From: Octopus sinensis
Lineage: Eukaryota
Reading direction: 5' to 3'
DNA: 64,000 bases
NCBI RefSeq assembly: GCF_006345805.1
Contig: NC_042997.1
Coordinates: 123,690,001-123,754,000, forward strand
Numbering within the stretch: position 1 is the first letter of the stretch; each line of letters opens with the position of its first letter. Below are positions 11,707 to 61,700 of this stretch, in pieces. Both the position numbers and the translations under genes were made by a program. Under the pieces are notes generated by a model. That model was not told the DNA's origin. It searched no databases and was given only the letters and a program-made list of their open reading frames with translations.

Positions 11707-13460
11707 TATGTTTGACTTTTGCTTTATATTTGTACAAGTTGGCTCCAAGTCTCACCCAGTGACCTCAAGAAACAACAGGTTGGAAGTTCATGTTGTTGTT
11801 ATGCCTAGTGTGCCATATATTGGGGGGGGGTTGTACTAATGAATGTCTAAAAAGAATAAATAAATAAATAAATAAAAAAATTTTAATAAAAAAAAATAAA
11901 AATTTTTTTTTTTTTTCCTTTCCCTTAAAAACCGAAAATTATGTTTGTTTAAACCTTGAGATTACATAGAAATTATTTTGCGTAGGATATGAGCAGTTCC
12001 AATGAGCACTATCTTTTGAATTTCTGCCATTTTTGGGTTTCCTGGTATCTGAGTTAGGTAGCTATAAGCCCATTTTGCTATCATTCCCAGGGCACCTATG
12101 AGAACAGGTATTGTTTTAGTCTTCAGGTTCCACATTTTGCTGAGTTCTATTTCAAGATCTTTATATTTGCTCAGTTTTTGGTAGGTCTTGACAGATACGT
12201 TTATATCGATAGAGACAGTCATATCAATGAGGAGGCATCTTCTTTGTTTGAAGTCTTTCAATATGATGTCTGACCTATTTGCATCTATCTTTCTGTCAGT
12301 TTGGATGGCGAAGTTCCAGAGGAGTGAGATGTGGTCATTTTCAAGCATTGGAGGTGGTTTGTGTTCCTACCAGTTTTTTTTCATGGGGCAAATCCAGGTT
12401 TTTGCAGATTACCCAGTGAATATATTGTGCAGCTCTATCGTGTCTGTTGAGATACTCTGTAGGCGCTAGAAGACTGCACTTGGAGACCACATGGTCAATG
12501 GTTTCATTTTGTTGCTGGCATACACGACACGTTGGACTGCTTCTGATCTTTAATATGTTGGCCTGGTAGTTTCTTGTTGGTAGGCATTGATCTTGAGCTG
12601 CTATGATAAACCCCTCTGTTTCAGATTTTAAGCCAGAGGCCATTAGCCATTGATGGGTCAGGGCTTTGTCAACATCTACATTATTTGCTCTCTTTGGGTA
12701 TTTGCCATAGAGAGGTTTTTCTTGCCATTTATCATTCAGAATATCTAAGGCTACAGATTTAGCACGGGTTTTCATGCGCTTAGCTTTTTCTGTGCCTGTT
12801 TCTTGTATGTCTATCTCTAATTCCGAAATTTGTTGTATTCGGAATTCACTTAGATATTCCTTTGCCTGTTTTGTTACTGCGTATGATGCTTTCTTGTTTT
12901 CATGTTTTGAGACAAGTTTTAACATCCAGTCCTCAGAGTTTTTCAGGTAGGTGTCTAGGCTAATTGTAGCAATCTTCATTGTTATTGTCAGTTGTAAAAG
13001 TCCACGGCCTCCTTCTTTTCTTGGCAGATAAAGTCGTTCTGTATCTGCCTTAGGGTGGTGCATTGTATGCATTGTCAACAGTTTTCGTATTTTCCTGTCA
13101 AGATTACATATTTCAGTAATTGACCAGTTAACGATATTGAAACTGTAAGTCACAACTGGTATGGCCAATGCATTGATCGCTTCGATCCTGTTTCTCGCAT
13201 TCAGCTCTGTCTTGAGTATTGCTCTTACTCTGCAATAACATTCTCTCCTGATCCTTTCCTTCATCTCTGAATGCTTTATTCCTTCTCCTTCAATTACCCC
13301 TAGATACTTGTAGTTCTCTGCTGGGTATAATTCTTTTATGACATTCTGCTGGTCAAGGTTAACGTTAGATGTTTCTGTCATTTTTCCTTTGATAAAGGTA
13401 GCTTTTGCACACTTATCGAGGCCAAATTGCATTCTGATGTCATCACTGAATTGTTTGACA
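11706..13460 (-). mobile_element. 5'-truncated R4/Dong-clade non-LTR retrotransposon (RT thumb, CCHC knuckle, restriction-like endonuclease, 3' UTR)
   Basis: ORF 12341-13432 has FGLDKC, LYLPRKEGGRGL and CRVC...ETIDHVVSKC...RHD. ORF 11962-12348 has the RLE motif (DANRSDIILKD...IDMTV...KLSKYKDL). A frameshift at an A8 run and a TAG stop fall near 12370. Both junctions are in TAA repeats. Confidence 0.9.
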
Positions 13461-13491
<31 letters not shown>

Positions 13492-13508
13492 TATTATTAT
13501 TATTATTA

Positions 13509-13551
<43 letters not shown>

Positions 13552-13563
13552 CATTATTATTAT
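13461..13563. repeat. (TAA)n microsatellite at the 5' junction of the R4/Dong element
   Basis: Direct inspection. Confidence 0.95.
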
Positions 13564-13703
13564 TATATATAAAGTTTAATTTATATAATTTATATAAATT
13601 GGTGTTTGCTAAATTTTTCTTGAGAACATCCCCTTCTTAGTGGTATGACCATAGCGTATCATCTTCTAGCATAATGAACGCTCACTTATAAGTCACTCCT
13701 TTT

Positions 13704-13714
13704 ATATGTATGTA

Positions 13715-13753
<39 letters not shown>

Positions 13754-13765
13754 ATATATATATAC

Positions 13766-13850
<85 letters not shown>

Positions 13851-13855
13851 CATAC

Positions 13856-13931
<76 letters not shown>

Positions 13932-13982
13932 TATATATATATAATATATATATATTATATATATATAATATATATATATATA
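13704..13982. repeat. Long interrupted (TA)n microsatellite
   Basis: Direct inspection; it generates the spurious IY-repeat ORFs. Confidence 0.95.
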
Positions 13983-14232
13983 CAAATTGAGATAGGGGTT
14001 GTAAATGCAACCCTCCATGGGATAACATATATCCAATATACTGCTAGTGAAGTACTCAACAAAGTTAATACATAAATGTTAAGAATTGCGATGCAGTTAA
14101 TTCATTTACTGTATTATATGGCCAAAGGTAAAATGTTTTACCACAAATTCATAATACAAAATAAGAAAATAGAGAAATACATCGAAATACATCTTACAGG
14201 TCAATATGTAGTTATAAATGAGACATATGTCT

Positions 14233-15905
14233 CATTTAGGAGTTTGTGGGTCTTCAGGAAGTCAGCTATCCTTGATCTTAACACTCTTTCAAACACTTTA
14301 ATGATGTGGGAGGTGAGTGAGATTGGGGTATAGTTGACTGCGAGGGATTTGTTTCCCTGTTTGAAAACCTGGATGACCGACTGGGATAGAAACTGTTTCG
14401 GTATATAACCTGCGTCTAATTAATTTCTCCAGAGGTTGGTCAGAGGGACTGCAAGTTGGTATCTACATTCCTTCAGGAGACTAGCGGGAAATCTATCAGG
14501 GCCTACAGCGAAGTAATGTTTGACCTCATTTATTGCTGCTACGATGTCAGTGGCAGTGAAGGTTATGTCTGAGATTTTGTGTTGGGAGTCAACTTCGTTC
14601 GTTTCCCTTACGTCAATATCAGTGGGAACACTAAAGACAGAGCAGTATTGTTTCTGCAGTATTTCTGCCATTTCTTTAGCATCGTGTTGGGGAATGCCGT
14701 TATCATCAATCAATAGCCCAATGGGTGAGACAGTGGTTCTATGCTTATTTGCATAAGAATAGAACACTTTAGGGTTCTGTTTGATGTTTTTGATTACCCA
14801 TTGTTCCTCCACAGCTTTTTGATTTTCAATGGATGTTTTCATGATGGTCTGCAAATGAAGTTTTTCCAGCTCTAGTCTTTTCATTGTTGTTGAATGTGGA
14901 TGTGTGTGGGAATATTTTAATTGGTTGATTTTTTTGTTGAGTCTTTTGATGCGCCTGATGAGTGTTTTTTTTTCTTTTTAGGAAGCCGGTTTCTGTTTGC
15001 GTTAGTAGATTTCTTGGGAGCGTGTTTAGAGCATCTATAGGTGACAATGTTTTCAAAGTGCTGCCACGCGGTCTCAATATGAGAGGAATTGAGAGTAAAA
15101 GACCAGTCGATGGAAGACAGATCCTTTCTGATTGTTCCCCAGTCCGCTTTGTGGAAGTTTATGTTGTCAAATGGGTGCCATGGAGTGGGATTGGCTGGTT
15201 TGGTTTTTATATGTCGGGAATTAAGATTGCAGAGTACCATGTCGTGGTCTGAGAGGAGAGTTTTTTCGACTGAAATACTGTGAAATGTAGCTAGAGTGAT
15301 TGGTCAATACCAGATCCAAGATCGTTTTATTCTGTCTCGTTGGTTCGAGCACTAGCTGAGTCAGGAAATATTCATCCATCAGATTAAAGAGCAGTTCTGC
15401 TGCTGCTCTATCTGATGTAGAGCACTTGCCTAACTTCAGAGTATTTGTGGGCCAGTTCACATGAGGGAGGTTAAAATCACCTATCACTAGTATGTTTCCG
15501 AAGTGGTACTTCCGAAGGAAGGACTTGACTTTGCTAAGGCACTCTTTAAAGTACTTTAGAGGTGCCTGGGGAGGCCTGTAAAGACCAACAATGGTTATGT
15601 CCTTGGCTTTGTTGTATAGTGATACCGATTCACAGTAGCCATTGGAAAATATGTCCTTGGCATCAAGTGAAAAGGAGTCATGGATAAAGATGGCTGTCCC
15701 TCCCTTATTTCGGTATGTGCGATCCGCACGAACAATGGTGAAATCTTTTATTTTCACCTCTGCGTCCATATGGGTGTTGTTCAGGTGAGTCTCGGTAAGG
15801 ATAAAGAAGGGAAGCAATGTGCCATTTCGGCAAGCCAACTCTCTATATATGGGATCTTCCATTTTTGGGCAATAATTGATGGGTTGATGCCACGTACATT
15901 TAACA
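14233..15905 (-). mobile_element. CR1-like LINE ORF2 5' half (APE endonuclease, linker, start of RT), frameshifted
   Basis: LNVRGI...LTETHL...RADR...GGTAIFI...GLYRPP...VIGDFNLPHVNW...EPTRQNKTILDLVLTN, then KQNPKVFYSYAN, AVGPDRFPASLLKEC, and PISLTSHIIKVFERVL. Confidence 0.9.
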
Positions 15906-23189: not shown

Positions 23190-23233
<44 letters not shown>

Positions 23234-23515
23234 CAACAATTGAGGGTAAAATTAATTAATTAATCAATTTCACCAAGTATTCAGTATGCAAAGGGACCAT
23301 TTAAGGCGAATTCAAATTATTACATTATATAAAAGGGCTTAGTAAAATAAATTACTTTGCCGCATACTGAACTCATTAGATAATAGCAGCTAAAAAAAAC
23401 CTTTTATCAAACTATTTCTAATACTTAAAGAAAACTCTCTCATATAGTGTTTGCTCAATTCAACTCACGAAAGTATGGGTGTAGAGACATTAAAAAATCA
23501 AATGCAAAGGTTATT

Positions 23516-23568
23516 TGAGAACGTACGTTTCAAAATTAGTCAAAATCGACATTTCTATCATCAGCTCA
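23516..23568 (-). ncRNA. Type I hammerhead ribozyme motif
   Basis: UGAG-CUGAUGA-U-AGA..UUU-U-GAAA-C-GUAC-GUU-CUCA on the minus strand. Confidence 0.65.
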
Positions 23569-24243
23569 GAACTCCCTGGTTTGGATTTGAAAACACTGAA
23601 AGTGGGGGCGTACCCTTTCGGCTTCTTATCGCTTCTGAAGATCCGCTCGAAACTAACAGTGCCAGCAAACTCAAATATGCAAGCGAAGAATTTCTGCTCT
23701 CCCCCTTTCCACCAACCAACGTGGGTTAAAATCAGCAAACACTATGCTTTTTTCGGTAAAATCCGAGGCATTTAAATAGAGAGAGATGAATTATAATTTC
23801 ACAACAATTGAGGGTAAAATTAATTAATTAATCAATTTCACCAAGTATTCAGTATGCAAAGGGACCATTTAAGGCGAATTCAAATTATTACATTATATAA
23901 AAGGGCTTAGTAAAATAAATTACTTTGCCGCATACTGAACTCATTAGAAATAGCAGCTAAAAAAACTTTTATAAAACTATTTCTAAAACTATTTCTAATT
24001 TTTACCCTCAATTGTTGAAATTATAATTCATCTCTCTCTATTTAAATGCCTCGGATTTTACCGAAAAAAGCATAGTGTTTGCTGATTTTAACCCACGCTG
24101 GTGGAAAGGGGAGAGCAGAAATTCTTCGCTTGCATATTTGAGTTTGCTGGCACTGTTAGTTTCGAGCGGATCTTCAGAAGCGATAAGAAGCCGAAAGGGT
24201 ATGCCCCCACTTTCAGTGTTTTCCAATCCAAACCAGGTAGTTC

Positions 24244-24296
24244 TGAGCTGATGATAGAAATGTCGATTTTGACTAATCTTGAAACGTACGTTCTCA
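24244..24296 (+). ncRNA. Type I hammerhead ribozyme motif
   Basis: UGAG-CUGAUGA-U-AGA..UCU-U-GAAA-C-GUAC-GUU-CUCA; palindromic stem III ACGUACGU. Confidence 0.7.
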
Positions 24297-24481
24297 AATA
24301 ACCTTTGCATTTGATTTTTTAATGTCTCTACCCCCATACTTTCGTGAGTTGAATTGAGCAAACACTATATGAGAGAGGTTTTCTTTAAGTATTAGAAATA
24401 GTTTTATAAAAGTTTTTTTAGCTGCTATTTCTAATGAGTTCAGTATGCGGCAAAGTAATTTATTTTACTAAGCCCTTTTTA

Positions 24482-24513
<32 letters not shown>

Positions 24514-35611: not shown

Positions 35612-36899
35612 TGCATGTAAATATGGAGGGTGCGTTGTTTTACCTTATTTCGAGAATTGAAGAAATTTAATTACAAACATTAAAAAACAAAACTAAAAGC
35701 ACTATGCAAATACATATTTGTAAAATTTCATTTCTTCATTGTCATATTAAAATCGCTGTCTTGAATGCAACAAATCATATTTATACTGTATTTTATTTAA
35801 ATAACACCTATGACCAAATTTTCATTTAAAGTTTTATGTGGTACAGAAACTTATTAATTAAGATTTAAATGCAAAATAATAAAACAGATCTTCTTTAAAT
35901 TATAGTATACACTTAAAAAAAAAACGTTCGATATACTTCATGATGTTCATGTCTAGAACGAAAATGAAAAAAAGTGATACAATATCGTATGGTGTGACTT
36001 CTTGTACAGGACCGACAATAAAATATTCAAAATCGTTAACATGCAACCGTATTTGAACGACATAATCGCACCTCCAGGAAATTTTACGATATTGTTCATT
36101 GCACGCCATAAAATAATCTAAGATTCGTTTGATAACTTTTATATTTGTTATTATTCTTGTAATTGTCAATAAGACTAATATTGACACGTTGGCAATGTAG
36201 TGTATTAAAGTGATTCCTGTTTACAGAAGATAATTTTGATAGCGATACGCAAATTTATAAAGGGAAAACGATGGCAGCTGTATTTTAAATGAAACTGTAG
36301 CGTATATGATATAGAGGGAAAGACATTTAATTCTAAACTCTACAATGTACATAACCTATTAAACCTTTGGAAAATTAATATTGAAAAATGAAATTATTTT
36401 CTTTAGACAAGTTAAGCATAGTAGAAATATATTAATTTTTAGGTATGCATGATCGATCTACCACCTACTTTTAAGTGAAATCAACAAAAAAAAATATCAT
36501 TTATCTTCTCTAGGTTATTTTAGAGAATTAATTTCATATATCTAAGTATATACAGGAAAACATCGTGTAGATAAGAATCTTTATCATGATTTTCGTTGAA
36601 TGAGAGATATACTTGAATGCATCGCCCTCTAAACAAGATTTGATTCATAATTCTTCTTACAGTCCTTAATTCTGATCCGCTTTACTGCATTTATTTCTGT
36701 AAGGGATCCAATCGAACGCGTTTCTCTATCAACCTATGCATATCCCTGTAAGAGGTTTTCTACGCTTATTGAGGTTGACGTCATCGACTTGTCCCCTTCC
36801 CTCAAAATTTCAGTCATTCTATCCATAATTGAAAAAATTTAAGCCGACGAACGGACATAACTCATATTACACTTAGCGACGTAAGTTCTGAGTACAAAT

Positions 36900-37470
36900 T
36901 TCTTCCTCTTCTCCTTTTCTCCTTCATCTGTTCCTTTTTCTCCTTCTTCTCCTTCTCCTTTTTTCTTCTGTTTCTCTTTCTCCCCCTTCTCCTCCTCCTC
37001 CTCAATCTTCTTCTTCTTCTTCTTCTTCTTCTTCTTCTTCTTCTCTTCCTCCCCCTCCTTCTCCTTCTTCCTCTTCTCCTTCTATTTCCTCTTCTTCTTC
37101 TTGTTCTTGCTGTTGTTGTTGTTGTTATTGTTATTGTTGTACTTCTTCTGATTCCCTTTCTCCTCCTTCTTCTTCTCTTCCCCCTCCTCCATCTTCCTCT
37201 TCTCCTTCTACTTCCACTTGTTCTTCTTGTTCTTCTTGTTCTTCTTGTTGTTCTTCTTCTGCTTCCCTTTCTCCTCCTCCTCCTCCTCCTCCTTCTTCTT
37301 CTCTTTCTCCTTCCTCCTCCTTCTTCCTCTTCTCCTTCTCCTTCTACTTCCTCTTTTTCTTCTTGTTCTTCTTGTTCTTCTTCTCTTCTTGTTCTTCTCT
37401 TTTTCCTCCTCCTCCTCCTTCTCCTTCTTCTTCTTCTTCTTCTTCTTCTTCTTTTTCTTCTTCTTTCCCT
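36900..37470. repeat. Compound (CTT)n/(CCT)n polypyrimidine tract
   Basis: Direct inspection; source of the spurious R/E-rich ORFs. Confidence 0.95.
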
Positions 37471-39580
37471 ATCCGCCGAAGTGTTGATGATGCTGCACCA
37501 GTGAGACCTGAAACTAAAGAGGCAATAAAGGAATTCAAACTTTTTGACGTATGGAATACGAATGGGAATTTTTAAGTGTGGGAAACGAATCGGAGGAAAC
37601 CAAACCTCTGGTGACAAGGAAAAATATAAAATTAATCCACAGAAGTTTTCATATAACATTAGATTGAAGAATATAAATCTCTGCTGATAAATTCACATGA
37701 AGTTAATATAGAAACCAATTTGACCTTTTTCGCCAGTTTGCTTCTGTAATTATAAAAGTTGCGATTTTCTTTCATGTATCGACTTATGATGATAAATTCT
37801 AACTCAAAATTAGGTTCTAGTAATGGATGAAGTTTCTGTTATTCTCCTTGTATCAGATGCTTATATTCTCTGCTAAATTGGCTAGAATATATATTGCATT
37901 CATTAGCAGGTATGTCATACATAGTGATTACAGATGAAAGAATTATTCCGTAACTGAATAATTTCGTAAAGTTTAGTGGATTAATGCATTATACCGATTC
38001 ATTAAACTTATTCATCGTAGAATCGATTCATAAAGACCTGATTAATTAACTGATTGAACATTTTAAAGTGTGGCCTCGTGAAAGAAGGTCATTGAAGCCT
38101 CAGTGAGAATGTAATTAAGCATATTGCCGATTGATCTTTGGTGGAGCAGCGAAGGAATAATATGTCTCTATTAACATTTACAAAATGGGTTCGCTTAGGC
38201 ATGTAATTTCATCAAAGTAATGTCAGAACTTATGCCTTCTATATAATAAATATATCTTGGTGGTATTATTAACCCATTGGGATATGAATGTATGAGAGAC
38301 AACCCTTACATCAATGTTGTTATATAACATATATTGCTCAAAGTCTGAAATGTTATAAGTGTCTCTTTTCGACTTAGTATAAAGGCATGGTATTCTACGT
38401 GAAGAGTGAAATTGGATAATGTAACGTTTATAGCTATTCCACCGGATGTTAATGAAGTGTATTAACCTGAAATGTGGATAGAAACTATGTCGCGGTCTTG
38501 GCTTAAGAGGAACATAAGGCTTTTTTTCTACAGTTGTCTCAACACAGCAGTTAATGGTATTGTCTGGATAGATATGCGAAATAATTTTCATAATCCGTTA
38601 ATTTAATAACAGTAAACATGATGCAGCCAGCCGATATACGATAAAAGTTCACAGAATGTATCATGTATGTCTCTTATGCACATATGAATACACATAGATG
38701 TGTAGCTTGACTGTAATCGCCGATATATAGCTTCGCTTTAAGTTTGTGCGTTTGAAAGTATGGCTACGTTGTGGCAGGGAATGTGCACTTGGGCGTGCAT
38801 GTGTGCGTGCGCGTTCTCACAAGTGTATGAATGTGAGTGGATAAGATTGAATCCCATGCTGAATAAATATTCATATAAGATATTGAGACACTCTATATAG
38901 GAACTGTATACTCTGTAATGTAATTTCAGTCATCGGGGAACAGAGGGGATTTAATACATACAGCAATATACACATTTTATTTAATTCTACAACTAACGCT
39001 TTGTTTACAAGGCTTCGTAATCACGCCCCAGCCTTGATCCCAATACATAGCATCTTAGAAACGAAGATCTTCCTGTGGCCTCTTGTAGACCCATCACTTT
39101 TGAGTGAAATTAAGTAGCCAGAAACTGCAGTATCTCATCGGGCCAACTGGGACACATTTTGTCACACTGACACCGCCTAATAAATTATGTTAAGAATACA
39201 CGTAGCAGTCGAGTGTTCAGCCATTTCAAATTCAATGAGCAAGAAAGTTCTTTAGACCGAAAAACTGATTATCATCGTTGAAGCCGAAGACAAACTTTTT
39301 TATTTTTTATTTTGTAGCGGTTCACGCGAGCTAAAGAATAACATTGAAAGTGATTTATCTCATGTAGAAGCGGTCAAATTTCTCTTAAATCATATATCAT
39401 AGTCTCAAAGGAGTTGCAGTACGGTAAACAATGCAATCTATACCGACTGAATAAAATTTCGACGGGATAGCAACAGCTGGCAAGCAGTCGTTTAACGAAC
39501 AACTCAGATCAGATACAGATTATTCGTAACAAATTATAACTGAACTAACAACATGGCATGCCGGGGAATCTGCTTTTGGT

Positions 39581-49090: not shown

Positions 49091-50448
49091 AAACTTAGAT
49101 AAACTTATATATGTTTCGACCAAAGATTGGTCCAGGCCATGTCTAACTTAATAGCACAACCTGATAGGATTATTTGAATCCTGTTTAAGTCAAGTTTTGT
49201 TTATGGTCCATTCAATTAGTGAGTTTTTGTTGTGTTAGTTGTATCCAATTATGGGTGGCTTATCTGGTATTCCTTGAAGGAATCTAACCACACTCCGTTT
49301 AAAGTTGATGGGATCCTTTTCCTCTTTGATCCCTTTCGGGACAATGTTAAATAGGGCAGGGCCTGTTGAGGAAAAGAAATTATGTTGCAGTGAACATATA
49401 TACTGTGATCTGGAATTGGGCAGGGGACGTATGGCCCGTGGTCCCAGTCTTGGATGAACCTTGAAGCTAATGTTCAGGTCGTTTGGGCAAAGTTGGCGGT
49501 ATATTCTCCACATCGTACAAATGATGTACCGCTCACGGCGACGCTGGAGAGAGTAGAGTTTCAAGGCCTTAAGGCGATCCTAATAATCGAGAGCAGCCAT
49601 GCCCTCAATTATTTTAGTGAGTGCCCTCTGGGGTGATTCAATCCTCGAGATGTTTTGTCTTGTATGGGGAGACCACAGTGGGCAGCAGTATTCGAGTTGT
49701 GGCCTTACAAAGGAGGAGAAAAGTGGTATGATGACACCTTGTTCTTAAGATCCAGGAACTCATCCTACGAGCTATATCTGCACTCCAACTGAGATCGTCA
49801 TCAACAATTACACCCAGGTTTCTGATATTGTTAGAGGCTGCGAGCGGTTCCCCTGAAGGAAGTGAGTATGGCTGTTCTAGTGAGGAATTTCTTCTAAAAT
49901 GCATCAGCTCAAATTTTCCCTCGTTCAGTTGCATTTTGTTTCTGTCTGCCCATTGACTCACAGCATATAGATCAGACTGGAGTTGAGTTCGGTCTGCTTC
50001 TTCATTGACGATTTGCTGGAGCTTAGTGTCATCAGCAAATATTTTCACTTTGCAGTAATGTACGACACTGGAAAGGTCGTTTATGTAAATTATGAAGAGT
50101 AGCGGACCCAAGACAGTCCCCTGGGGGACACCGCTGGTGACTTTTGCTGGGCTTGAGTGGACTGCGTCAACTACAACATGTTGTGTTCTATTCGCCAGGA
50201 AATACTTGATCCAGTGTAGAACTTTTCCACGGATTCCAACATTTGCCAATTTTGAGAGTAGGATATTATGGTCTACCCTGTCGAACGCTTTACTGAAGTC
50301 AAGATATATGACATCAGAGTTCGAACCTGTTCCCAAGGCTTTGAGTACATCATCAATATGGTGTAAGAGCTGTGTTATACAGGCCCTACCACAGCGGAAG
50401 CCAATGATTTGCATTTAGGAGTGTGTGGGTCTCCAGGAATTCAGCTAT
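49091..50448 (-). mobile_element. 5'-truncated CR1-like LINE 3' half (RT, C-terminus, 3' UTR, ATCTAAGTTT tail)
   Basis: DVIYLDFSKAFDRVDH, SGVPQGTVLGPLLFIIYINDL, FADDTKL, then LKLYSLQRRRERY; both ends lie in (TA)n; frameshifted. Confidence 0.92.
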
Positions 50449-50672: not shown

Positions 50673-51691
50673 ATATACATGCACATACAAAAGCCTATAG
50701 CAATCTGTAGGCGTATATACTATATATGTGCATCTTATCCTCAATAATGTTCATAATATTCCCACCTGAATTGAATATGTCGGAGTACATCCGCTATGGA
50801 AACAAAACAGCGTATTACTGTTGTTGTGCAAAATTTGTTACTCTGCCAATAAAAATGCATCACTCCTTTCAGATCAGTGTAGAATTACAGCGATATTGAT
50901 TATCGAACATTTATGAAGCCCCTGTAAGAATTCTTGTCATAACTCAACCAGATTTAAAGATGGTCAAATTGTATTGTTGCTAGTTTTTTTGTATTCTTAA
51001 ATTGAGGTCACGATCTATCAAAGTTCTGAATATTCATGCGTGTTTAGATCTTTCTTATTTACGGCAGCTGTATGTCTCTACAAGCAAAATTACGATTTTA
51101 TTGAAAGACATTAAACAACTATTTCCTATGAAAAAAATATTCAAAAAATACTTTCCTACGGACGACAAAAGTTGCTGAAGTAGGATTTAGTATAATCTAT
51201 GATAATTTTTGAGATGTACAAGAGTGCACGGCATAATAAATTTTAGAGCTCTATATTAAGGACACAATTTTATGGAAGACAAACTTCAATTTGCCATAAT
51301 AAATCGAAAATGACAAGTCTTCAAATCAATGCAGCTTTAGTGCTAAATGTCATAATATAGAAATATGGCGTCATATTTGAACATATCTGAACGTTACATA
51401 AGAAAAATATATGCAAGATGATACTATATATATTTTTCGGATCTCTCGTGGTTTTAGTGAATAGACACTTATATACATACAAAATCGTCGGGCCTCTTGG
51501 AGCTAATCTGCGACAGTTTTAGTCTTATATTTATATACTACCATATTAGTATGGCGATAACTATTATTATCCAGTAACCCTGCCGTAATATCCTTTAGAG
51601 AGACTTAGTAATTTTAATATTTCTATTATTGAAAACAAGTGGATGTATTCCACTGTAACTAGGTAAATAAAATCTTCGAATAGACGATCAG

Positions 51692-51777
51692 TAGCGACAC
51701 CTGCGGGTCTGACTACGCTGCATTGATAAAGGGCAACAACCCTGAAACATGTCTATAGATATCTGACTAGCAAGGTG
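51692..51777 (+). ncRNA. Type I hammerhead fold, U3-A8 variant, copy 1
   Basis: CUGCA-UUGAUAA-AGGG-CAACAA-CCCU-GAAA-C-AU-GUC (site after 51753); stem I carries private mismatches. Confidence 0.7.
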
Positions 51778-52235
51778 AAGCGGCTGACCTCCCCTGTTCG
51801 AAGGTTTGTAATGGACGCAGGTTCGTGTGTCAAATAGCTAGCTAGAGGCGATGGCCTCTTGGAGCTAATCAGCGACAGCTTTAGTCTTATATTTATAGAC
51901 TACCATATTAGTATGGCGATAACTATTAATATCCAGTAACGCTGCCGTAATCTCCTTTAGAGAGACTTAGTAATTTTAATATTTCTATTATTGAAAACAA
52001 GTGGATGTATCCCACTGTAACTAGGTAAATAAAATCTTCGAACAGACGGTCAGTAGCGACACCCGCTTTTTGTTTTTGGTGACCGATATTTCTGATTGCG
52101 TTATTGTTGTGTAGCTATATTTTTTGGCGTCGGAAAAATTTTGACTACGTTATTGTGGTGTAGCGGTTCGTGAGATCGAATCCGGTGGTGGAAGTTGTTA
52201 CGGCGTGGTGAAGTTTTTGAGATTTTTTCACGAAA

Positions 52236-53573
52236 ATGGAAACCCAGACGTATGCGGGTGCAGCAGGCAAGCGCCTGGTTGCGAAGGAGTTGCAGTTAGA
52301 AGAAGTCATCGTCGAGATGGAGACTTTGAACAAGTATTTCGACAGCTTGAAGAGGGAGGGTGACTGTGTGAAGGTCACACCACCCGAAGAAGAAGCGGAA
52401 GAAGCGGAGAAACAGATTATAACGTACAAAACATGGAGCGTGACTTCGAAGAAAATAGAAGTGGCACCGATAGAGGAAGTTGAATGCTGTCTTAAAGGAA
52501 TAGAAGCAGAGTCTACCTACTATAACAGAGGTAGAAAGTTCGCAACGGTGGTCGTCCACTTTAAAAGTGAAGACGAGGCGAAGAAGAACGCAACGAAAAT
52601 TTTAAAAACTGATAGATGGATGTGTTTACCAAGCTACTGCGGGAAAAGGGCAGTCAGAATAAAAATAAGCAAGATTTCGCCAGAGCTAAATATGGAAAGG
52701 ATTTTAGCAGCAGTGGTGTTTAATTGCAAAGAAAACGTGGAAATGTTGAAAGTCGAAAAATCAAAAGATGTAAAGTGGTGGGGTTATGCAGTGCAGGCGT
52801 TAGTCCACATTACAATGCCTGACCTGTATAACATCCCGGAGGAGTTGGTGTTCCCCGTCGAGACACGTCTCAGAGACGTGGTGGAGGGGAGACCGCCAGT
52901 GTGTCACAAATGCAAAATAAGAGGCCACATGAAGGATGTATGTCCGCTGAGAGAAGTACAGGAGAAAACGATAGCACTGGAGACTTTAACGAATGAGTTG
53001 CAAGATGCGTGTGTGGAGGAGGGAGAAATCGTTACTACAGATAATGCGGAAAGTGGTGACGAGTTGGAGAGAGAAAATAGAAAAAGAACGCGCGTGGAAT
53101 CACCACCCAAAGAACAAAAAAAGAAGAAGAAAAAAGCGAAAAACAAGATTACTGACGAGAAGGAAAACCGAACGGGAGAAGAGGATACAAAAGCAGAAGT
53201 TAGTGAACCGCTAAAAGCAGTTGAAGAATGGGACAGAAAATTGAAACAGCAGTTGAAAGCTTGTAAGAGAGGAGGAGGACTCAAGGGAAAGAAACACAGA
53301 GTGGCAATGTTATACGACAAGGACTTAAATTTGGAAAAGATGTTGCCAGGTAGGAAAGACTTAATTAGAGTAAAGTTGACCCCAGGAATATTTGATAAAT
53401 ATTGGAAGGCGGTAATCGTGGAGAAAGAGACGGTACGCAAATTGAAGGAATATAGCGCATTTGAATGGTTATATTTACGTTATGACACCTTACCAGCTGA
53501 TGTGGATCAGGAAGGCTTACTAGAGTATATAACAGATGAAAGACCAGTCTATGCAGACGAGTACCAAACGTAG
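52236..53573 (+). CDS. 445-aa L1/Tx1 ORF1-like nucleic-acid-binding protein (RRM-like region, CX2CX4HX4C knuckle, K-rich NLS-like tract, unknown C-terminal domain)
   Basis: Intact ATG to TAG. Motifs: TQTYAGAAG, FATVVVHFKSEDEA, PSYCGKRAVRIKISKI, VVEGRPPVCHKCKIRGHMKDVC, RKRTRVESPPK...KKKKKK. The paralog shows strong synonymous bias. Confidence 0.85.
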   Translation: METQTYAGAAGKRLVAKELQLEEVIVEMETLNKYFDSLKREGDCVKVTPPEEEAEEAEKQIITYKTWSVTSKKIEVAPIEEVECCLKGIEAESTYYNRGRKFATVVVHFKSEDEAKKNATKILKTDRWMCLPSYCGKRAVRIKISKISPELNMERILAAVVFNCKENVEMLKVEKSKDVKWWGYAVQALVHITMPDLYNIPEELVFPVETRLRDVVEGRPPVCHKCKIRGHMKDVCPLREVQEKTIALETLTNELQDACVEEGEIVTTDNAESGDELERENRKRTRVESPPKEQKKKKKKAKNKITDEKENRTGEEDTKAEVSEPLKAVEEWDRKLKQQLKACKRGGGLKGKKHRVAMLYDKDLNLEKMLPGRKDLIRVKLTPGIFDKYWKAVIVEKETVRKLKEYSAFEWLYLRYDTLPADVDQEGLLEYITDERPVYADEYQT

Positions 53574-53794
53574 CAGAGTAATATATGTAATTGTAAAATT
53601 GTAAATTGTGAAATTGTAATTTAAATGAAACTGCGAGCTTTGGGGGGCTCGTAAGCCGTTCCATCTCATCCATTATAAATATCCATTTCAATTCATAATT
53701 TTCGATTTTTTTTACTTTATGTACCCCACGTCCTGTCTTGTAATATCCCCTCTTAATTCGGGCCTCAGTGCCTATAATAAATATTTCAGTAGCG

Positions 53795-53875
53795 ACACCT
53801 GCGGGTCTGACTACGCTGCATTGATACAGGGCAACAAACCTGAAACATGTCTGAAGATGTCTGACTAGCAAGATG
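53795..53875 (+). ncRNA. Type I hammerhead fold, U3-A8 variant, copy 2 (A9C lesion)
   Basis: CUGCA-UUGAUAC-AGGG-CAACAA-ACCU-GAAA-C-AU-GUC (site after 53851). Confidence 0.55.
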
Positions 53876-54146
53876 ACGCGGTTGACCTCCCCTGTTCGAA
53901 GGTTTGTAATGGACGCAGGTTCGTGTTTCACATAGCTAGCTAGAGGCGGTGGCCTCTTGGAGCTAATCAGCGACAGCTTTAGTCTTATATTTATAAGACT
54001 GCCGTATTAGTATGACGATAACTATTAATATCCAGTAACGCTGCCGTAATCTCCTAGGTAAATAAAGCGTTATTGTTGAGTCGCAGTTGTGAGATCGAAT
54101 TCGTTGGTGGAAGCGTTTGCGGCGCTGGGAATTTTTTTTCTCAAAA

Positions 54147-55467
54147 ATGCAAACCCAAACGTATGCGGGAGCGGCAGGCAAGGGCCTGGCTGCGAGCGAA
54201 CTACAGTTGGAAGAAGTTACAGTCAAGAAGGAGATTTTGAAGAATTATTTCGACAGCTTGAAGAGAGAAGGTGACTGTGTGAGGATCACACCACCTGAAG
54301 AAGAAGCGAAAGATTCAGAGAAACGTATTATAACTGACAGAACGTGGAACGTGTCTTCAAAGAAAGGAGAAATGGCACGGATAGAGGAAATCGAGCGCTG
54401 TCTGAATGGAGTTGAAGGAGAACCTACCTTCTATAATAGAGGTAGAAAATACGCAACAGTGGTCGTTCATTTTAAAAACGAAGACGAAGCGAAGAAGAAC
54501 GCCACGCAAATACTGAAAACAGAAAAATGGATGTTATTACCAAGTTATCGTGGAAAAAGGGCAGTAAGAATACGAATCAGTAAGATTTCGCCGGAGCTGA
54601 ACATGGAAAGAATCTTAGCGGCAGCGGTATTCAACTGCAAAGAAAGCGTTGAAATATTGAAAGTAGAAAAATCGAAAGATGTACAGTGGTGGGGTTATGC
54701 GGTGCAGGCTTTGGTTCATATAACCATACCAGACCTGTATAACATCCCAGAGGAGTTGGTGTTCCCCGACGAGACGAGACTCAGAGTCGTGGTGGAGGGG
54801 AGACCACCAGTGTGCTACAAGTGTAAAATTAGAGGCAACATGAAAGATGTGTGTCCGACGAGAATATTGGAAGCTCTGACAGAGATATTGCAAATGGCAG
54901 ATGAAAAATGTGTAAACACAGAAAATGAGGAAAGTGGTGACGAGTTGGAGAAAGGAATGGAAAACACAGAAGGAAAAGTAGATAGAAAGAGAGCGAGGGT
55001 GCAATCACCACCTAAAGTTCAAAAAAAGAAAAAAGCTAAAAATAAGACAATAGACGAGATGGAAGATCGAACGTGCGAAGATAAGAATACAAAAGCGAAA
55101 GCGAGAGAACCGGCAAATTTAACGGCAGACCAAGAATGGGGAAGAAGAGTGAAAGAGAAGTTAAAAGTATGTAAGGAAGGAAGAAGACCCGAAGGAAAAA
55201 AATCTTAAGGTAGTAATATTGTATATGAAAGACAAAGAAATCGAAAAAAGACTGGCAGCTAAGAAAGGTTTAATCAGGGTTAGGCTGAATCCAAAAATAT
55301 TTGATGACCAAGTGAAGTCGGCGGTTGTAGAGAAAGAGACATTTATAAAATTGAAAAGTGTGTTTTCGACTGTTTGTGAAATGCAATATATCCGTTACGA
55401 CAGTTTGCCAGCGATTGTAGACCAGGAGAAGTTAATAGAATACATTACAGATGAACGCTCAGTATAG
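54147..55467 (+). pseudogene. Second ORF1-like cassette with a +1 frameshift in an A7 run (55196-55202) and an H-to-N change in the knuckle
   Basis: ATG at 54147 aligns with 52236. Removing one A fuses 54147-55208 with 55219-55467 (EGK-NLKVVILYMKD...), colinear with copy 1. The knuckle reads CYKCKIRGNMKDVC. Confidence 0.75.
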
Positions 55468-55652
55468 CAGAACTGTATTTTAAATGAAACTACGAGTTTT
55501 GGGGGGCTCGTAAGCCATTCCATTTAATTCATTACAAATAATTCATTTTCATATCATATTTTTCGATTTCTTAAATTTATGTACCCCACGTCCTATTTTG
55601 TAATATCCCCTCTTAATTCGGGCCATCGTACCTATAATAAAGATAATAGCGA

Positions 55653-55732
55653 CACCTGCGGGTCTGACTATGGTGCATTGATAAAGGGCAACAGCCCTGA
55701 AACATGTCTGCAGATGTCTGACTAGCAAGGTG
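55653..55732 (+). ncRNA. Type I hammerhead fold, U3-A8 variant, copy 3 (best preserved)
   Basis: UGCA-UUGAUAA-AGGGC-AACA-GCCCU-GAAA-C-AU-GUC-UGCA (site after 55708), plus a distal stem I helix GGUCUGAC/GUCUGACU. Confidence 0.75.
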
Positions 55733-55959
55733 AAGAGGCTGACCTCCCCTGTTCGAAGGTTTGTAATGGACGCAGGTTTGTGTGTCAAATAGCTAGCTAG
55801 AGGCGATGGCCTCTTGAAGCTAATCAGCGACAGCTTTAGTCTTATATTTATAGACTACCATATTAGTATGACGGTAACTATTAATATCCAGTAACGCCGC
55901 CGTAATCTTCTTTAGAGAGACTTAGTAATTTTAATATTTCTATTATTTATATATATATA

Positions 55960-56008
<49 letters not shown>

Positions 56009-58123: not shown

Positions 58124-59547
58124 CAGGCGGTGTCCTCCACTATCCATGATCGCATCTCCTCCTCCCGTCCCCCCACCGCCTCCAACCTCATTGTCCGCAC
58201 CACTCGCACCCCCACAATAACCTAACAACCCTGATCGCCCCAGCATCTCCTACAACTGCCCCACCGAACTCATCTCCAGATATCTTGACCGTGTCCTTGA
58301 CCCCTAGCGGCTTCCCTCCTCTCTCACATCTATGACACCAACCATGCTCGTCGTCTATTCAGCCCTTTCTCCGTCCCTCCAGGCCCCTCTAAACTTCTCT
58401 TCACTCTTGACATCAAGAGACTATACACAGTGATCCCTCACCACGAGGTGCTTCGGGCACTCCATCACTACCTTGATCTTCGACCCAATCCTCAACCTGA
58501 CACATCCACACTTCTTCGTCTGGCCGAACTTGTTCTCTCGCTTGACTGCTCGTTCACGGGTGATTTTTACCAGCAGGTTTCGGGTGTGTCCACGAGATCG
58601 AGAATGGGCCCCAACTATGCGAACATGCTCGTTGGCTACGTTGAGGCCCAAATATTCTTAAGTTTCACTGGCCCCACTCCCGAATAATACGGTCGTCATA
58701 TTGACGACGGTATTGGTGCGACCTCACTCTTCTGCGAAGAACTAGCCTTCTTCCTCTCTTTTGTCAAATATTTCCATCCTGCCCTCCACTTCTCCTGCAC
58801 TATTTCCAACACTTCCGTCGCCTTTCTCGATATTTCGGACAGCATTCATCACTGCACTCTCACTACCTCTATGTACTACAAACACGCAAATACCTCAACT
58901 TCTCCTCCTCCCACCCTAAATACACTAATCTCTCTATCTACAATTCCCAATTATTCCATCTGCGCAGGCTCTGCAGTGACAACCATGACTTTGAGACTCA
59001 ATCTCAACTCCTGGCTCGCTACTTCATCCTACGTGGGTATCCCCTCACCACTATCCACACCGCCCTTGCCAGAGCGTTTTGCGTAGACCATGCATCTGCT
59101 CTCTACCCTCGCACCCCCCGTCACTCGTCTCCCGTTTCCCATTACCTACCACCCCTCTACCCTGCCTCTCTAATGCACATTTTCTGAGCCTTCCAGTGAT
59201 TCCAGTTCGACCCCCCCCACTTTGCACATCTTCTCTAACCGACTCAGCCCCTCCTTCAAACGAACCCACAACATACGTGATCTCCTGGTCCACAGTTTCT
59301 ACCCAAACCCAACCTCCCCAACCGGCTCGTTCTCCTGCTCTCGCCCACGCTGGAGCACTTGCCCTTACCTCTCCAACACCACCATCCAAAGGCACCCATC
59401 ATCGACCCTATAATATCACTGACTCCTTCACCAGCACTTCTAACAAGGTCATCTACTGCATCACCTGCTCTCTCTGTCCTTCTCTGAACATCGGCCAAAC
59501 GGGACGCCGCTTGCTTGACCGGCTCGCGAAAGACCTCCGAGACATTT
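58124..59547 (+). mobile_element. Penelope-like element RT plus GIY-YIG pseudogene (C-rich)
   Basis: NLIVRTTRTP, CPTELIS.YLD, LFTLDIKRLYTVIPH, MGPNYANML, YGRHIDD, FSCSRPRW.TCPY, VIYCITCSLC...NIGQTGRRL.DR. Confidence 0.9.
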
Positions 59548-59769
59548 CCGCATGTATGTATACGTATACATGTATATACGTATACATACCAGTTTCTCAA
59601 AATTTCCATCAGGGATTCAATAAATTTGTTGTCTGCTTGTTCTTCGGGCATATTAAGGAAAATTTGTATAAATAAATTCTCGTTTGAAGCCCCTTTCTAT
59701 ATCTCCAGGTTGAGTTATGTATGTTGTACTATGAACCTGTGCCTTGGCCTTTTAGATGGTACAACCAGG

Positions 59770-61700
59770 GTCTGTGCAATTATATTTCGGGCTGTCATCT
59801 CTCATCATAACCATTAGGCTTGCTTGAGTCACTGCACCAGCATTGTGCAGTTTAACCCCATGGTGACGTTATTTTTTTTATCAGGCCATTCGGTTGCACT
59901 GATGTCACTCAGCAATTAATGCAAGAAAATGGTTCGGCGTATATGTACGTGGACCGCTGTAAATTATGCACAGTTTTTTTAATATAAACTGTCATCACTG
60001 GGAGGACCATAAATTTAACGAAACTGGCCTAGCTGGATGCGACTGTAAATCCCATGAAGGACCACAAGATTTTGCTGAACCTTTACAAATTTGGTAGCAA
60101 ACCTTAGTGGAAATGGTGGTGTAACAGCCAAATCTACTGCTTTTATACTATTATGGCGATGAAGTTTCGATCTGTGGTTATGAGGAAGCGCTGGGAGGTA
60201 CGTGGTGGATAATAGGTTGCGGTCTAAAAATGCATTGGTGCCTCTGATGTAAATCTTCTATACCCAGCTAAACGGGCATATAATAGAGAAAGACATTCTC
60301 AGAGGTAATATGTTACAGTGAGGTAATAGTGAGAAATATTTACATGAAGATTCTAACAAACCTATCGAATTCCTTGAAATTTGCACGGTGGCCTCTGTTA
60401 TCGATTGCATCAGTGATGGCGGATATTTATATCAATGGTACACAAATAAGTAGAAAACCGCAGCAGATAGGGCTGCGTATATTATCATCATCGGATTCAA
60501 AGCGACTAAACAACTCGCGTAAATTTACGTCAACCGATGTTAAGGGGTTAATGGACGCGGCAAAATTTTCTGCTAAAATAGCTAACATTCAGAGATCTTC
60601 CTTTGAATATTCTATAATACTTGCAGTGCCTGGGGAAAATGTCATGATAATAAATTCTAAACATCATCTAGCTAGATTAGTCTTAACGCCTTTTAATTTT
60701 GACGAGTTGAACTCCAAAGCAAATCTAGTTCCAGTTTTCTTTTTTTTTTGAGAACTTTTGCTGTTATCTACACTACCAACATATGGAAGATATGCTCTGG
60801 AAATCCTCTGTTACAGAGTATGCCATTATATTAAGAAGAGATATTGTTAAAAGCCATATCATTACTAACCATGTATTTTAGTATGAAGGATGGATATGTG
60901 AAAGCATCATTAGCATATAATAGCTTTCCGTTATGTTTACTATAAAGCCTGACGGTTACAGAAAGCAGATCAAATTTCATATCTAATATTCATGCCAAAG
61001 GTTGCTTTGAAATTCATACGCTGGATGAATAAAATATGATACTTTTTAAGGCTCTTGAGATAATGCACATTGATTTTTCCATTGATGATAAGGTTGTCAT
61101 CCTTGTATAGACCGGCTTCTGCAAAAAGGGGATTCTGTATGCGAACAATATAGGTAGGTCTCGGCCTTGGCAAAAAATATGTGACTATTGGTGACTCAGA
61201 CATTGGATTTTGTTACTGAAGTGTAAATGTCCACGCTCTAAAATTGAGTATACTTTCAGTTTTATTTAGAATTCCTTTTTCTTTAACCAGTCTATAACAG
61301 ACTTGTTATTAGTCTATCATGGGAGATTTACTACGTTTTTATTCCTAAGGAAAATGGAATCTAAGTTATTTCTATACTAATTTCTAATTAACTTTTAGAT
61401 TGGTTAATAAGCAACTAAAGTCAGCTTTGTTCTCCTTAAGACTAATAAAAGTTTTTTGCGGTGGAATTTACCCTCCTGTATCGCGAGAAATTCGGTTAGT
61501 AAGGATTATTTTTCCTTCTAGATTCCCCTCGTTATATAAAACACTTATCCGTATCCTTAATATTGTTAGAGAGGAACCAGATATAAAGGCATCACTATAC
61601 ACGATTTTTATCTTGCCCGAAGGTACAGCTATTTTGTTAGTGTTTAGCATGAAATTAGGCTTTCCTTGAGTGTTCTTCGCTTACTGGAGGCAAAAAGCAA
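59770..61700 (-). mobile_element. Highly decayed Penelope-like element of the GLY(R/K)DD type
   Basis: Fragments TFISLKENK, NNKSVIDWL, TQF*SVDIYTSV, AGLYKDDNL, NRGFPE and FPRHCKYYRIFKGRSLNVSY, in PLE order. A degenerate AUGAUGA..GAAA motif lies at about 59781-59810. Confidence 0.6.

What the first reader, a model, noticed from the sequence alone, without database searches (positions are those of the whole stretch)
51491..55947. Candidate new system: hammerhead-delimited cassettes encoding an ORF1/Gag-like protein without RT (protein-coding retrozyme)
Seen: architecture A-B-A-ORF-C-B-A'-ORF-C-B-A, with a same-sense hammerhead in every B. Cutting at successive GUC sites (51753, 53851, 55708) would release 2098-nt and 1857-nt RNAs, each carrying one complete ORF with its UTRs. 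There is no ORF2, poly(A) tail, TIR or evident TSD, and the right end stops in (TA)n like the PLE-type insertions nearby. Established: non-LTR retrozymes are non-coding tandem hammerhead units that yield circRNAs; HAL1 elements encode only L1 ORF1 but are not ribozyme-bounded; bdelloid Terminons link diverse ORFs through hammerhead repeats and a PLE RT. I know of no described element combining an L1/Tx1-type ORF1 with hammerhead repeats. Inference: a non-autonomous retroelement with a (possibly circular) RNA that makes its own RNA chaperone and borrows a PLE RT.
Basis: partly seen in the sequence, partly recalled or inferred. Interest (0 to 1): 0.95.

Follow-up and report, generated by a model that had tools for sequence, protein, structure and literature searches.

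The report
Hammerhead-flanked LINE ORF1 cassettes in octopus
This octopus-type genome stretch holds a mobile element without its own reverse transcriptase, in which a Gag-like RNA-binding gene taken from a LINE retrotransposon sits between repeats that carry Penelope-type hammerhead ribozymes; that combination has not been described in the literature I could search.

Summary
The repeat architecture is real, and the hammerhead spacing of 2098 and 1857 nt is exact. Each B module holds a type I hammerhead of the Penelope/retrozyme kind: U3-A8 core variant, 2-bp helix III and a palindromic loop. Rfam misses it. Six homologous copies from this window and from Octopus vulgaris support the fold: 8 of 13 pairs carry compensatory changes, including C3-G8 to U3-A8.

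The 445-aa ORF is a real gene (dN/dS 0.13 between the two cassettes). It has tandem RRM folds, a CCHC knuckle and a C-terminal domain. Relatives at 24-36% identity are ORF1 of autonomous L1/Tx1-type LINEs in octopods, with an APE-RT-zf ORF2. The last ~60 nt of module C matches that LINE's 3' end.

Corrections: the second ORF is frameshifted and has lost its knuckle histidine. The second hammerhead has a core mutation.

Diverged ORF1-only elements in O. vulgaris (L002, L003, L004) show the same ORF1-C-hammerhead/A layout. They lack ORF2, and a (TA)n or similar simple repeat abuts at least one end of each.

So this is a family of LINE/Penelope chimeras, in effect protein-coding retrozymes. Which reverse transcriptase moves them is unresolved; I favour the Penelope-like enzyme over LINE ORF2p. 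Ribozyme cleavage and RNA circles are untested.

The parts
51491..51691 (+). Module A1: 5'-truncated copy of the structured A part of the pseudo-LTR. It ends in the 13-nt junction CAGTAGCGACACC.
   Evidence: 95.5% identical to A2.
51692..51852 (+). Module B1, with hammerhead 51716-51760. Predicted cleavage is after C51753.
   Evidence: 62.2 bits with model R1, which was built from this copy and five others.
51853..52066 (+). Module A2, full length. A1-B1-A2 makes 1.6 copies of a 362-nt non-coding, retrozyme-like unit.
   Evidence: Repeat spacing of 362 nt. The RNA fold has z = -3.86.
52067..52235 (+). 5'UTR of cassette 1.
   Evidence: 77% identical to the shorter 5'UTR of cassette 2.
52236..53573 (+). 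Intact 445-aa ORF: Type I LINE ORF1 homologue with two RRM-like domains, a CCHC knuckle (CHKCKIRGHMKDVC), a basic linker and a C-terminal domain.
53574..53789 (+). Module C1: 3'UTR with AATAAA at 53776-53781. Its last ~60 nt are homologous to the 3' end of an autonomous octopus LINE.
53790..53950 (+). Module B2, with hammerhead 53814-53858 (GUC ends at 53851). It carries the core change A9->C and one helix II mismatch.
53951..54062 (+). Module A3: A with an internal or 3' deletion of about 100 nt.
54063..54146 (+). 5'UTR of cassette 2 (shortened).
54147..55467 (+). ORF copy 2, a pseudogene. The reading frame stops at 55206-55208 after a 1-nt insertion. The C-terminal domain is in frame +1 from 55219. 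The knuckle His is replaced by Asn.
55468..55646 (+). Module C2 (3'UTR of cassette 2).
   Evidence: 80% identical to C1.
55647..55807 (+). Module B3, with hammerhead 55671-55715. Predicted cleavage is after C55708.
55808..55947 (+). Module A4, cut off in the AU-rich stretch of A where it meets (TA)n.
55944..56005 (.). (TA)n microsatellite at the right junction.

Best explanation
The locus is an insertion of a composite, non-autonomous retroelement family of octopods.

Composition:
- Each cassette (5'UTR, ORF1, 3'UTR 'C') descends from an L1/Tx1-type LINE that has lost ORF2.
- The cassettes are embedded between pseudo-LTR units (B+A) of the Penelope/retrozyme kind.
- Each pseudo-LTR carries a type I hammerhead with a very short palindromic helix III, a form reported to work best as a dimer.

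Proposed life cycle:
1. (Inferred) A read-through transcript of the array is cut after GUC in successive B modules. This yields unit RNAs of about 2.1 kb, or 362 nt for the ORF-less unit.
2. (Inferred) The RNA or an uncut mRNA is translated into ORF1p, an RRM-RRM-CCHC RNA-binding protein that coats its own RNA.
3. (Inferred) A reverse transcriptase supplied in trans copies the RNA into AT-rich or (TA)n DNA by target-primed reverse transcription. Template switching then gives partial-tandem and inverted copies. I think the enzyme is most likely the RT-endonuclease of a Penelope-like element.

Shown: the anatomy, the LINE ancestry of the ORF and of C, purifying selection on the ORF, covariation support for the hammerhead fold, and recurrence of the layout in other loci and species.

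Inferred: cleavage, translation from the unit RNA, and the identity of the mobilising enzyme.
For: Architecture:
-.

Hammerhead:
- Six homologous copies (three in the window, plus L002, L003 and L004) form 84.6% standard pairs against 73.8% in shuffles (0 of 500 shuffles reach it).
- 8 of 13 pairs change on both sides, including the tertiary 3-8 pair (U-A in four copies, C-G in two).
- Slid controls pair at 21-46%.
- U3-A8, a short palindromic helix III and dimer action are published for PLE hammerheads (PMC4209133).

ORF:
- dN/dS is 0.13 in the N-terminal part, 0.13 in the C-terminal domain and 0.33 in the linker.
- 305 homologues were found, and every one whose source I looked up is from an octopod.
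- The predicted structure matches tandem-RRM proteins.
- Relatives are ORF1 of LINEs whose ORF2 has Exo_endo_phos, RVT_1 and zf-RVT.

Module C:
- Its end is homologous to the LINE 3' end.

Family level:
- L002, L003 and L004 (27-33% protein identity to the window ORF) have ORF1-C followed by B and/or A-like modules; the hammerhead sits after C in L002 and L004 and in the inverted 5' copy in L003.
- They have no ORF2. (TA)n lies on both sides of L002, on the 5' side of L003 and on the 3' side of L004. Their outer ends lie in A/B rather than at the LINE 3' end.
- ORF1-only copies cluster apart from autonomous LINE ORF1s.

PLE link:
- An EN+ PLE in L002 has pseudo-LTRs, a minimal hammerhead and a (TA)n end.
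- The window holds PLE RT remnants and a non-coding inverted hammerhead element in (TA)n.
- (TA)n targets and tandem/inverted structures are PLE traits (PMC8557442). Internal RT initiation and extension of both strands are reported in PMC11167929.
Against: - No PLE whose pseudo-LTR is homologous to A/B was found.
- The conserved LINE 3' end in C, and the direct C-to-5'UTR tandem in L005 that mirrors the LINE array in L008, fit mobilisation by LINE ORF2p.
- The shared terminus in module A lies in an AU-rich stretch. It could prime on (TA)n by microhomology with any TPRT enzyme, and 5' inversions also arise by LINE twin priming.
- Rfam does not score the motif.
- Each window hammerhead has only 4 of 6 helix I pairs, and PLE-type hammerheads cleave poorly in vitro.
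- Only about nine loci were sampled, and two have assembly gaps.
Confidence: 0.5

Rival explanations
1. Half-LINE (HAL1-like) model. The cassettes are ORF2-deleted LINEs that the ORF2 protein of the related autonomous octopus LINE mobilises in trans, through the retained 3' end in module C. The hammerhead/A modules are either part of that LINE lineage's own UTRs (a LINE with a 5' hammerhead that trims co-transcripts, as R2 does with its HDV-like ribozyme) or co-mobilised passengers.
For: - ORF1 and the last ~60 nt of C are LINE-derived.
- L005 joins cassettes C-to-5'UTR with no A/B, like the head-to-tail LINE array in L008.
- A hammerhead-like relic without helix II sits at the 5' start of the L008 LINE (14.7 bits).
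- Inverted 5' segments fit twin priming, and the AU-rich terminus in A fits microhomology priming.
Against: - In four of four composite elements the outer ends lie in A/B, not at the LINE 3' end.
- The autonomous LINEs sampled (L006, L007, L008) carry no intact hammerhead.
- To my knowledge, the ribozymes described in LINEs are HDV-like, not hammerheads.
- The hammerhead form matches PLE/retrozyme motifs.
- No autonomous LINE was found inside the ORF1-only clade.
Confidence: 0.28
2. Deletion derivative of an autonomous two-ORF Penelope-like element. In this model a PLE with an upstream gag-like ORF1 plus RT-EN, as in Chlamys-2_cBra, lost its RT, and the copies seen are recent dead derivatives.
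For: PLEs with an upstream zf-CCHC ORF and a 3' hammerhead exist in algae (PMC8557442). The pseudo-LTR-like organisation fits.
Against: - No relative of the ORF is followed by a PLE RT. The autonomous relatives carry LINE ORF2.
- ORF1-only copies that differ by about 70% in protein sequence share the same RT-less layout and show purifying selection. This argues for a long-lived RT-less lineage.
Confidence: 0.08
3. Chance nesting or local duplication. Unrelated retrozyme units and ORF1 fragments landed in the same (TA)n-rich spot, or one segment was duplicated, and no composite mobile unit exists.
For: The region is rich in microsatellites and nested TE fragments. The two cassettes lie side by side.
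Against: - The same order (ORF1-C-hammerhead/A) recurs at independent loci on other chromosomes of another species.
- The cassettes are about 20% diverged while A/B are 91-97% identical, so this is not a simple local duplication.
Confidence: 0.05

Closest known systems
Metazoan non-LTR retrozymes (Cervera & de la Pena 2020)
   Same: Tandem units bounded by same-sense type I hammerheads, low GC, no RT, structured RNA. The 362-nt A+B unit here is within their size range of 170-400 nt.
   Different: Described retrozymes are non-coding ('don't encode any proteins'). Here 1.86-2.1 kb units carry a selected 445-aa gene and a LINE 3'UTR.
Penelope-like elements (EN+, Neptune-like, (TA)n-targeting)
   Same: Pseudo-LTRs with minimal or short-helix-III hammerheads including the U3-A8 variant, partial-tandem and inverted insertions, and (TA)n junctions.
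   Different: There is no RT or GIY-YIG endonuclease. The ORF is a LINE ORF1, not a PLE protein. No PLE with homologous pseudo-LTRs has been identified.
HAL1 (half-L1) elements of mammals
   Same: Non-autonomous elements that keep only the LINE ORF1 and rely on an RT supplied in trans (stated from my own knowledge).
   Different: HAL1 has Type II ORF1, L1-type ends and poly(A), and no ribozyme or pseudo-LTR. Here insertion ends lie in hammerhead-bearing modules.
Autonomous L1/Tx1-type LINEs of octopods (locus L008, O. vulgaris)
   Same: Homologous ORF1 (32-36% identity), a homologous 3'-terminal ~60 nt, and head-to-tail arrays.
   Different: They carry a 1132-aa ORF2 (APE, RT, zf-RVT) and no intact hammerhead.
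Chlamys-2_cBra PLE and bdelloid Terminons
   Same: Hammerhead-bearing PLE relatives that carry extra ORFs, including a gag-like zf-CCHC ORF.
   Different: Those are autonomous (a PLE RT is present). Terminons are giant, telomeric and EN-minus.

Membership tests
Hammerhead ribozyme, type I (PLE/retrozyme form) | Conserved core C3UGANGA9 ... G12AAA ... U16.1-H17 | tested here: met
   The core is UUGAUAA...GAAA...GUC. Positions 3 and 8 are U/A in four copies and C/G in two homologous copies, so the tertiary pair is kept. The U3-A8 variant is published for PLEs. B2 has A9->C.
Hammerhead ribozyme, type I (PLE/retrozyme form) | Helices I, II and III supported by covariation | tested here: met
   84.6% of cells pair. 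8 of 13 pairs change on both sides, against 2.9 in shuffles (0 of 500). Slid controls pair at 21-46%. Only six sequences were available.
Hammerhead ribozyme, type I (PLE/retrozyme form) | Match to an Rfam hammerhead model | tested here: not met
   No hit at gathering score or at E<=10. Rfam also missed a canonical CUGAUGA hammerhead in the pseudo-LTR of an octopus PLE, so the negative result says little.
Hammerhead ribozyme, type I (PLE/retrozyme form) | Self-cleavage | not testable with these tools
   This needs in vitro transcription of monomeric and dimeric constructs.
Non-LTR retrozyme | Tandem repeats, each with a same-sense type I hammerhead, and no RT | tested here: met
Non-LTR retrozyme | Small (about 170-400 nt) non-coding unit | tested here: not met
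   The A+B unit of 362 nt fits, but the two main units are 2098 and 1857 nt and carry an ORF under selection.
Non-LTR retrozyme | Expressed as circular RNA | not testable with these tools
   No RNA data were available.
Penelope-like element | RT with a GIY-YIG endonuclease | tested here: not met
   tBLASTn with an octopus PLE RT-EN finds nothing in 51491-55947.
Penelope-like element | Pseudo-LTRs with a hammerhead; partial-tandem or inverted insertions; AT-rich or (TA)n targets | tested here: met
   compared with PMC8557442 and PMC11167929.
LINE Type I ORF1p (L1/Tx1 kind) | At least one RRM plus a CCHC zinc knuckle | tested here: met
   The AF2 model (pLDDT >90 over residues ~20-220) matches tandem-RRM proteins. 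The C-X2-C-X4-H-X4-C motif is read from the sequence. Pfam zf-CCHC hits 14 homologues but not this ORF. The definition is from PMC5203782.
LINE Type I ORF1p (L1/Tx1 kind) | Encoded upstream of an APE-RT ORF2 | tested here: not met
   This holds for relatives in L001, L006, L007 and L008. It is absent here and in L002-L005.
HAL1-like half-LINE | LINE ORF1 and LINE 3' end kept, ORF2 lost | tested here: met
HAL1-like half-LINE | Insertion ends at the LINE 3' end or tail | tested here: not met
   The ends lie in modules A/B next to (TA)n in the window, L002 and L004, and in the A-like module next to a (TG)-rich simple repeat in L003.

The most novel reading that the evidence does not exclude
The GUC-to-GUC unit is processed by the hammerheads and ligated into a ~2.1-kb circular RNA. 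That circle is both the transposition intermediate and a translatable message for its own ORF1 chaperone. It would be a protein-coding circular retrozyme, and would bridge LINEs, Penelope-like elements and viroid-like ribozyme RNAs.
Probability: 0.15. Interest if true: 0.9.

Novelty: new variant of a known kind. Interest (0 to 1): 0.72.

Why it matters
- Retrozymes and other hammerhead-bearing non-autonomous elements are defined as non-coding parasites of Penelope-like elements.
- A long-lived, selected lineage that joins a LINE ORF1 gene and LINE 3' end to Penelope-type ribozyme repeats would be a cross-class chimera.
- Such a lineage would show that a non-autonomous element can keep its own RNA chaperone while outsourcing reverse transcription.
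- It gives a natural system for asking what ORF1p contributes without ORF2p.
- It also lets one test whether hammerhead processing, and possibly circularisation, is compatible with translation.
- Finally, it can show how PLE and LINE machineries choose their templates.

Tried and rejected
Searches that found nothing or little:
- Rfam at gathering score and at E<=10 found no hammerhead. This is uninformative, because Rfam also misses a canonical PLE hammerhead.
- Pfam and PDB sequence searches of the ORF gave nothing.
- The word-indexed homology search found nothing with the ORF alone and only one protein with the full alignment, because low-complexity words saturated the candidate list. A trimmed alignment gave three octopus proteins.
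- Exact-sequence look-ups of the window ORF, P0002 and P0004 are not on record.

Leads that were dropped:
- The only canonical CUGANGA...GAAAC...GUC match in the window (11036-11074, minus strand) lies in the YADD-coding part of a LINE RT. It is a chance match.
- The RT ORF next to the element (49638-50414, minus strand) is an unrelated LINE fragment and not part of the element.
- blastn of A/B against the L002 and L004 PLE regions found no homology beyond (TA)n noise.
- L009 (O. bimaculoides) was uninformative because of an assembly gap.
- The bacterial promoter/terminator scan is irrelevant for a eukaryote.

Arguments downgraded:
- I first read the shared terminus in module A as a PLE-specific RT start site. 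I downgraded this after seeing that it lies in an AU-rich stretch that could prime on (TA)n with any TPRT enzyme.
- I rejected programmed frameshifting at the A-run of copy 2. Reading on would need a +1 shift, and copy 1 has no such run.

Full report
**Observation**

Repeat analysis gives three copies of module B with start-to-start spacing 2098 and 1857 nt. It also gives four copies of module A, two ORF segments and two C segments.

- A1-B1-A2 makes 1.6 copies of a 362-nt ORF-less unit.
- A 13-nt junction, CAGTAGCGACACC, ends each full-length A (A1, A2) and follows C1. After C2 it reads TAATAGCGACACC.
- The element ends inside A4 against (TA)n.
- A and B copies are 91-97% identical, whereas the ORFs and UTRs are only about 80% identical. 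The two cassettes are therefore diverged family members joined by much more uniform A/B modules, not a local duplication.
- Neither a LINE ORF2 nor a Penelope-like element (PLE) RT-EN is detectable inside the element.

**The hammerhead**

Rfam reports nothing at gathering score or at E<=10. The motif in B reads 5'-CUGCA UUGAUAA A GGG CAACAA CCC U GAAA C AU G UC | UGCAG-3'. This is a type I hammerhead with U3/A8 in place of C3/G8, a 2-bp helix III and a palindromic ACAUGU.

Homologous motifs follow the same 3'UTR in Octopus vulgaris elements:
- L002 has UUGAUAA ... GAAAC UA GUC.
- L004 has a canonical CUGAUGA with a 6-bp helix I.
- The inverted copy in L003 has CUGAAGA ... GAAAC UA GUC.

On these six sequences the canonical hammerhead structure gives:
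- 84.6% standard pairs, against 73.8% in shuffles (0 of 500 shuffles reach it);
- 8 of 13 pairs with changes on both sides, including all six helix I pairs and the 3-8 tertiary pair;
- slid controls at 21-46%.

Helix III plus its loop stays palindromic in five of six copies (ACAUGU or ACUAGU). These traits are the ones published for PLE and retrozyme hammerheads: the U3-A8 covariation, a short palindromic helix III, and activity as dimers with low activity in vitro (PMC4209133; PMC7229834).

Rfam also missed a canonical hammerhead in the pseudo-LTR of an octopus PLE, so its silence is not informative. In the window, B2 has A9->C and a helix II mismatch. Each window copy forms only 4 of 6 helix I pairs. 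Catalysis is untested.

**The ORF**

The 445-aa ORF (52236-53573) has no Pfam or PDB sequence match. An exhaustive phmmer search finds 305 relatives. Every relative whose source I looked up is from an octopod: O. bimaculoides, O. vulgaris, O. sinensis or Argonauta hians.

Purifying selection between the two window copies is clear:
- dN/dS is 0.13 over the first 237 codons (third-position changes 78, against 23 and 22). The other two frames give 1.1-1.5.
- dN/dS is 0.13 for the C-terminal domain and 0.33 for the linker.

An AlphaFold model (pLDDT 76.6 overall, above 90 for residues ~20-220) shows two RRM-like domains. Its best PDB matches are tandem-RRM proteins such as IMP3 RRM12, Raver1, UP1 and Prp24. 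A C-X2-C-X4-H-X4-C knuckle follows, then a basic linker and a conserved C-terminal domain. This is the Type I LINE ORF1p layout (PMC5203782).

Copy 2 is a pseudogene. It has a 1-nt insertion in an A-run, a stop at 55206, the remainder in another frame, and Asn in place of the knuckle histidine.

**Genomic context of relatives**

Two kinds of context appear.

1. Autonomous LINEs.
   - In L008 (O. vulgaris) a 503-aa ORF1 is followed by a 1132-aa ORF2 with Exo_endo_phos, RVT_1 and zf-RVT. Three copies lie head to tail with a 5.28-kb period.
   - L007 (Argonauta), L006 (O. sinensis) and L001 are similar.
2. ORF1-only elements of about 2 kb: the window copies, L002, L003, L004 and L005.
   - None has an ORF2.
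   - In a rough neighbour-joining tree they cluster apart from the autonomous ORF1s. Internal identities are as low as 26-34%, which suggests an old RT-less lineage.
   - The last ~60 nt of module C, including AATAAA, align with the 3' end of the L008 LINE. Each of five comparisons is beaten by only 4-15 of 2000 shuffles.

Details of the ORF1-only loci:
- L002 carries an inverted plus a direct A (82% identical to the window's A), then ORF1, C and the hammerhead, with (TA)n on both sides.
- L004 has C, a hammerhead, B/A-like sequence and (TA)n.
- L003 has a large inverted 5' copy that contains the hammerhead.
- L005 joins two cassettes directly, C to 5'UTR, with no A/B.

**Mechanism**

The anatomy matches a Penelope-like element in which the RT-EN gene has been replaced by a LINE ORF1 cassette. 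Shared features are pseudo-LTRs with hammerheads, partial-tandem and inverted copies, and (TA)n junctions.

Supporting background:
- The literature lists (TA)n targets and tandem/inverted structures as PLE traits (PMC8557442).
- It also shows that a PLE RT starts inside the RNA and extends both target strands (PMC11167929).
- A Neptune-like EN+ PLE with pseudo-LTRs, a minimal hammerhead and a (TA)n end lies in L002.
- The window holds PLE RT remnants.
- The window also holds a separate 1.25-kb non-coding inverted element with two hammerheads, bounded by (TA)n.

In the window, L002 and L003, the (TA)n-abutting ends of module A fall within about 15 nt of each other. That site is AU-rich, so microhomology priming on (TA)n by any target-primed RT, including LINE twin priming, could explain it.

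The retained LINE 3' end and the L005 and L008 arrays keep LINE ORF2p as a serious alternative. I therefore favour mobilisation by a PLE enzyme but only at moderate confidence.

**Novelty**

Retrozymes are described as non-coding. PLEs with an extra gag-like ORF are autonomous. From my own knowledge, HAL1 elements lack ribozymes.

I found no description of a LINE ORF1 gene embedded in hammerhead pseudo-LTRs. I could not check Repbase or Dfam.

I rate this a new variant of known kinds: a LINE/PLE chimera, or protein-coding retrozyme.

Noticed in passing
window 23230-24485: A ~1.25-kb non-coding element made of inverted arms 97-99% complementary, bounded by (TA)n on both sides. Each arm carries a canonical hammerhead (CUGAUGA ... 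GAAAC GUAC GUU, palindromic ACGUACGU) at 23513-23571 (-) and 24241-24299 (+). It is a separate PLE/retrozyme-type insertion.
   Followed up: partly
L008 15011-15059 and 9734-9780: The 5' start of each unit of the autonomous octopus LINE holds a hammerhead-like string, UUCAUUGAU(A/U)CUCAAAAACGAAAC...GUCUGAAAU, without helix II (14.7 bits with my model). It may be a relic, which would mean the ribozyme association predates ORF2 loss.
   Followed up: partly
L008 4445-19184: Three head-to-tail copies (99-99.7% identical, period 5.28 kb) of a full-length L1/Tx1-type LINE are joined 3'UTR to 5'UTR without poly(A). The third copy stops inside ORF2.
   Followed up: partly
L002 1-3703: An EN+ Penelope-like element (TLKDHKANF RT motif, CxC linker, GIY-YIG-like end) with 288-nt pseudo-LTRs, a hammerhead CUGAUGAACGGCAACGAGAAACUCAGAGUA and a (TA)n end. 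It has no Pfam hit, and Rfam misses the ribozyme.
   Followed up: partly
window 51751-51761 and 55706-55716: An 8-nt palindrome spans the predicted cleavage site: UCUAUAGA in B1 and UCUGCAGA in B3. The two central bases differ but the palindrome is kept. Cofolding predicts a strong dimer through it. Its meaning is unknown.
   Followed up: no
window 53776-53781, 55637-55642, and within A (about 52030): AATAAA lies 10-25 nt before the C/B junction and before the end of A. A polyadenylated mRNA ending just upstream of the hammerhead is therefore possible.
   Followed up: no
window 49235-50414 (-), 12341-15862 (-): Unrelated LINE fragments: RVT_1 in the first; Exo_endo_phos_2 and zf-RVT in the second. 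The hammerhead-like string at 11036-11074 (-) lies in a YADD-coding stretch about 1.3 kb beyond the second fragment's annotated ORFs.
   Followed up: yes
window 187-750 (+), 60988-61272 (-): Weak tBLASTn matches (25-30% identity) to the octopus PLE RT. These are degraded Penelope-like remnants in the same window.
   Followed up: no
window 36862-37659 (-), 59079-59675 (+): ORFs of 265 and 198 aa with no significant Pfam match. They were not examined further.
   Followed up: no
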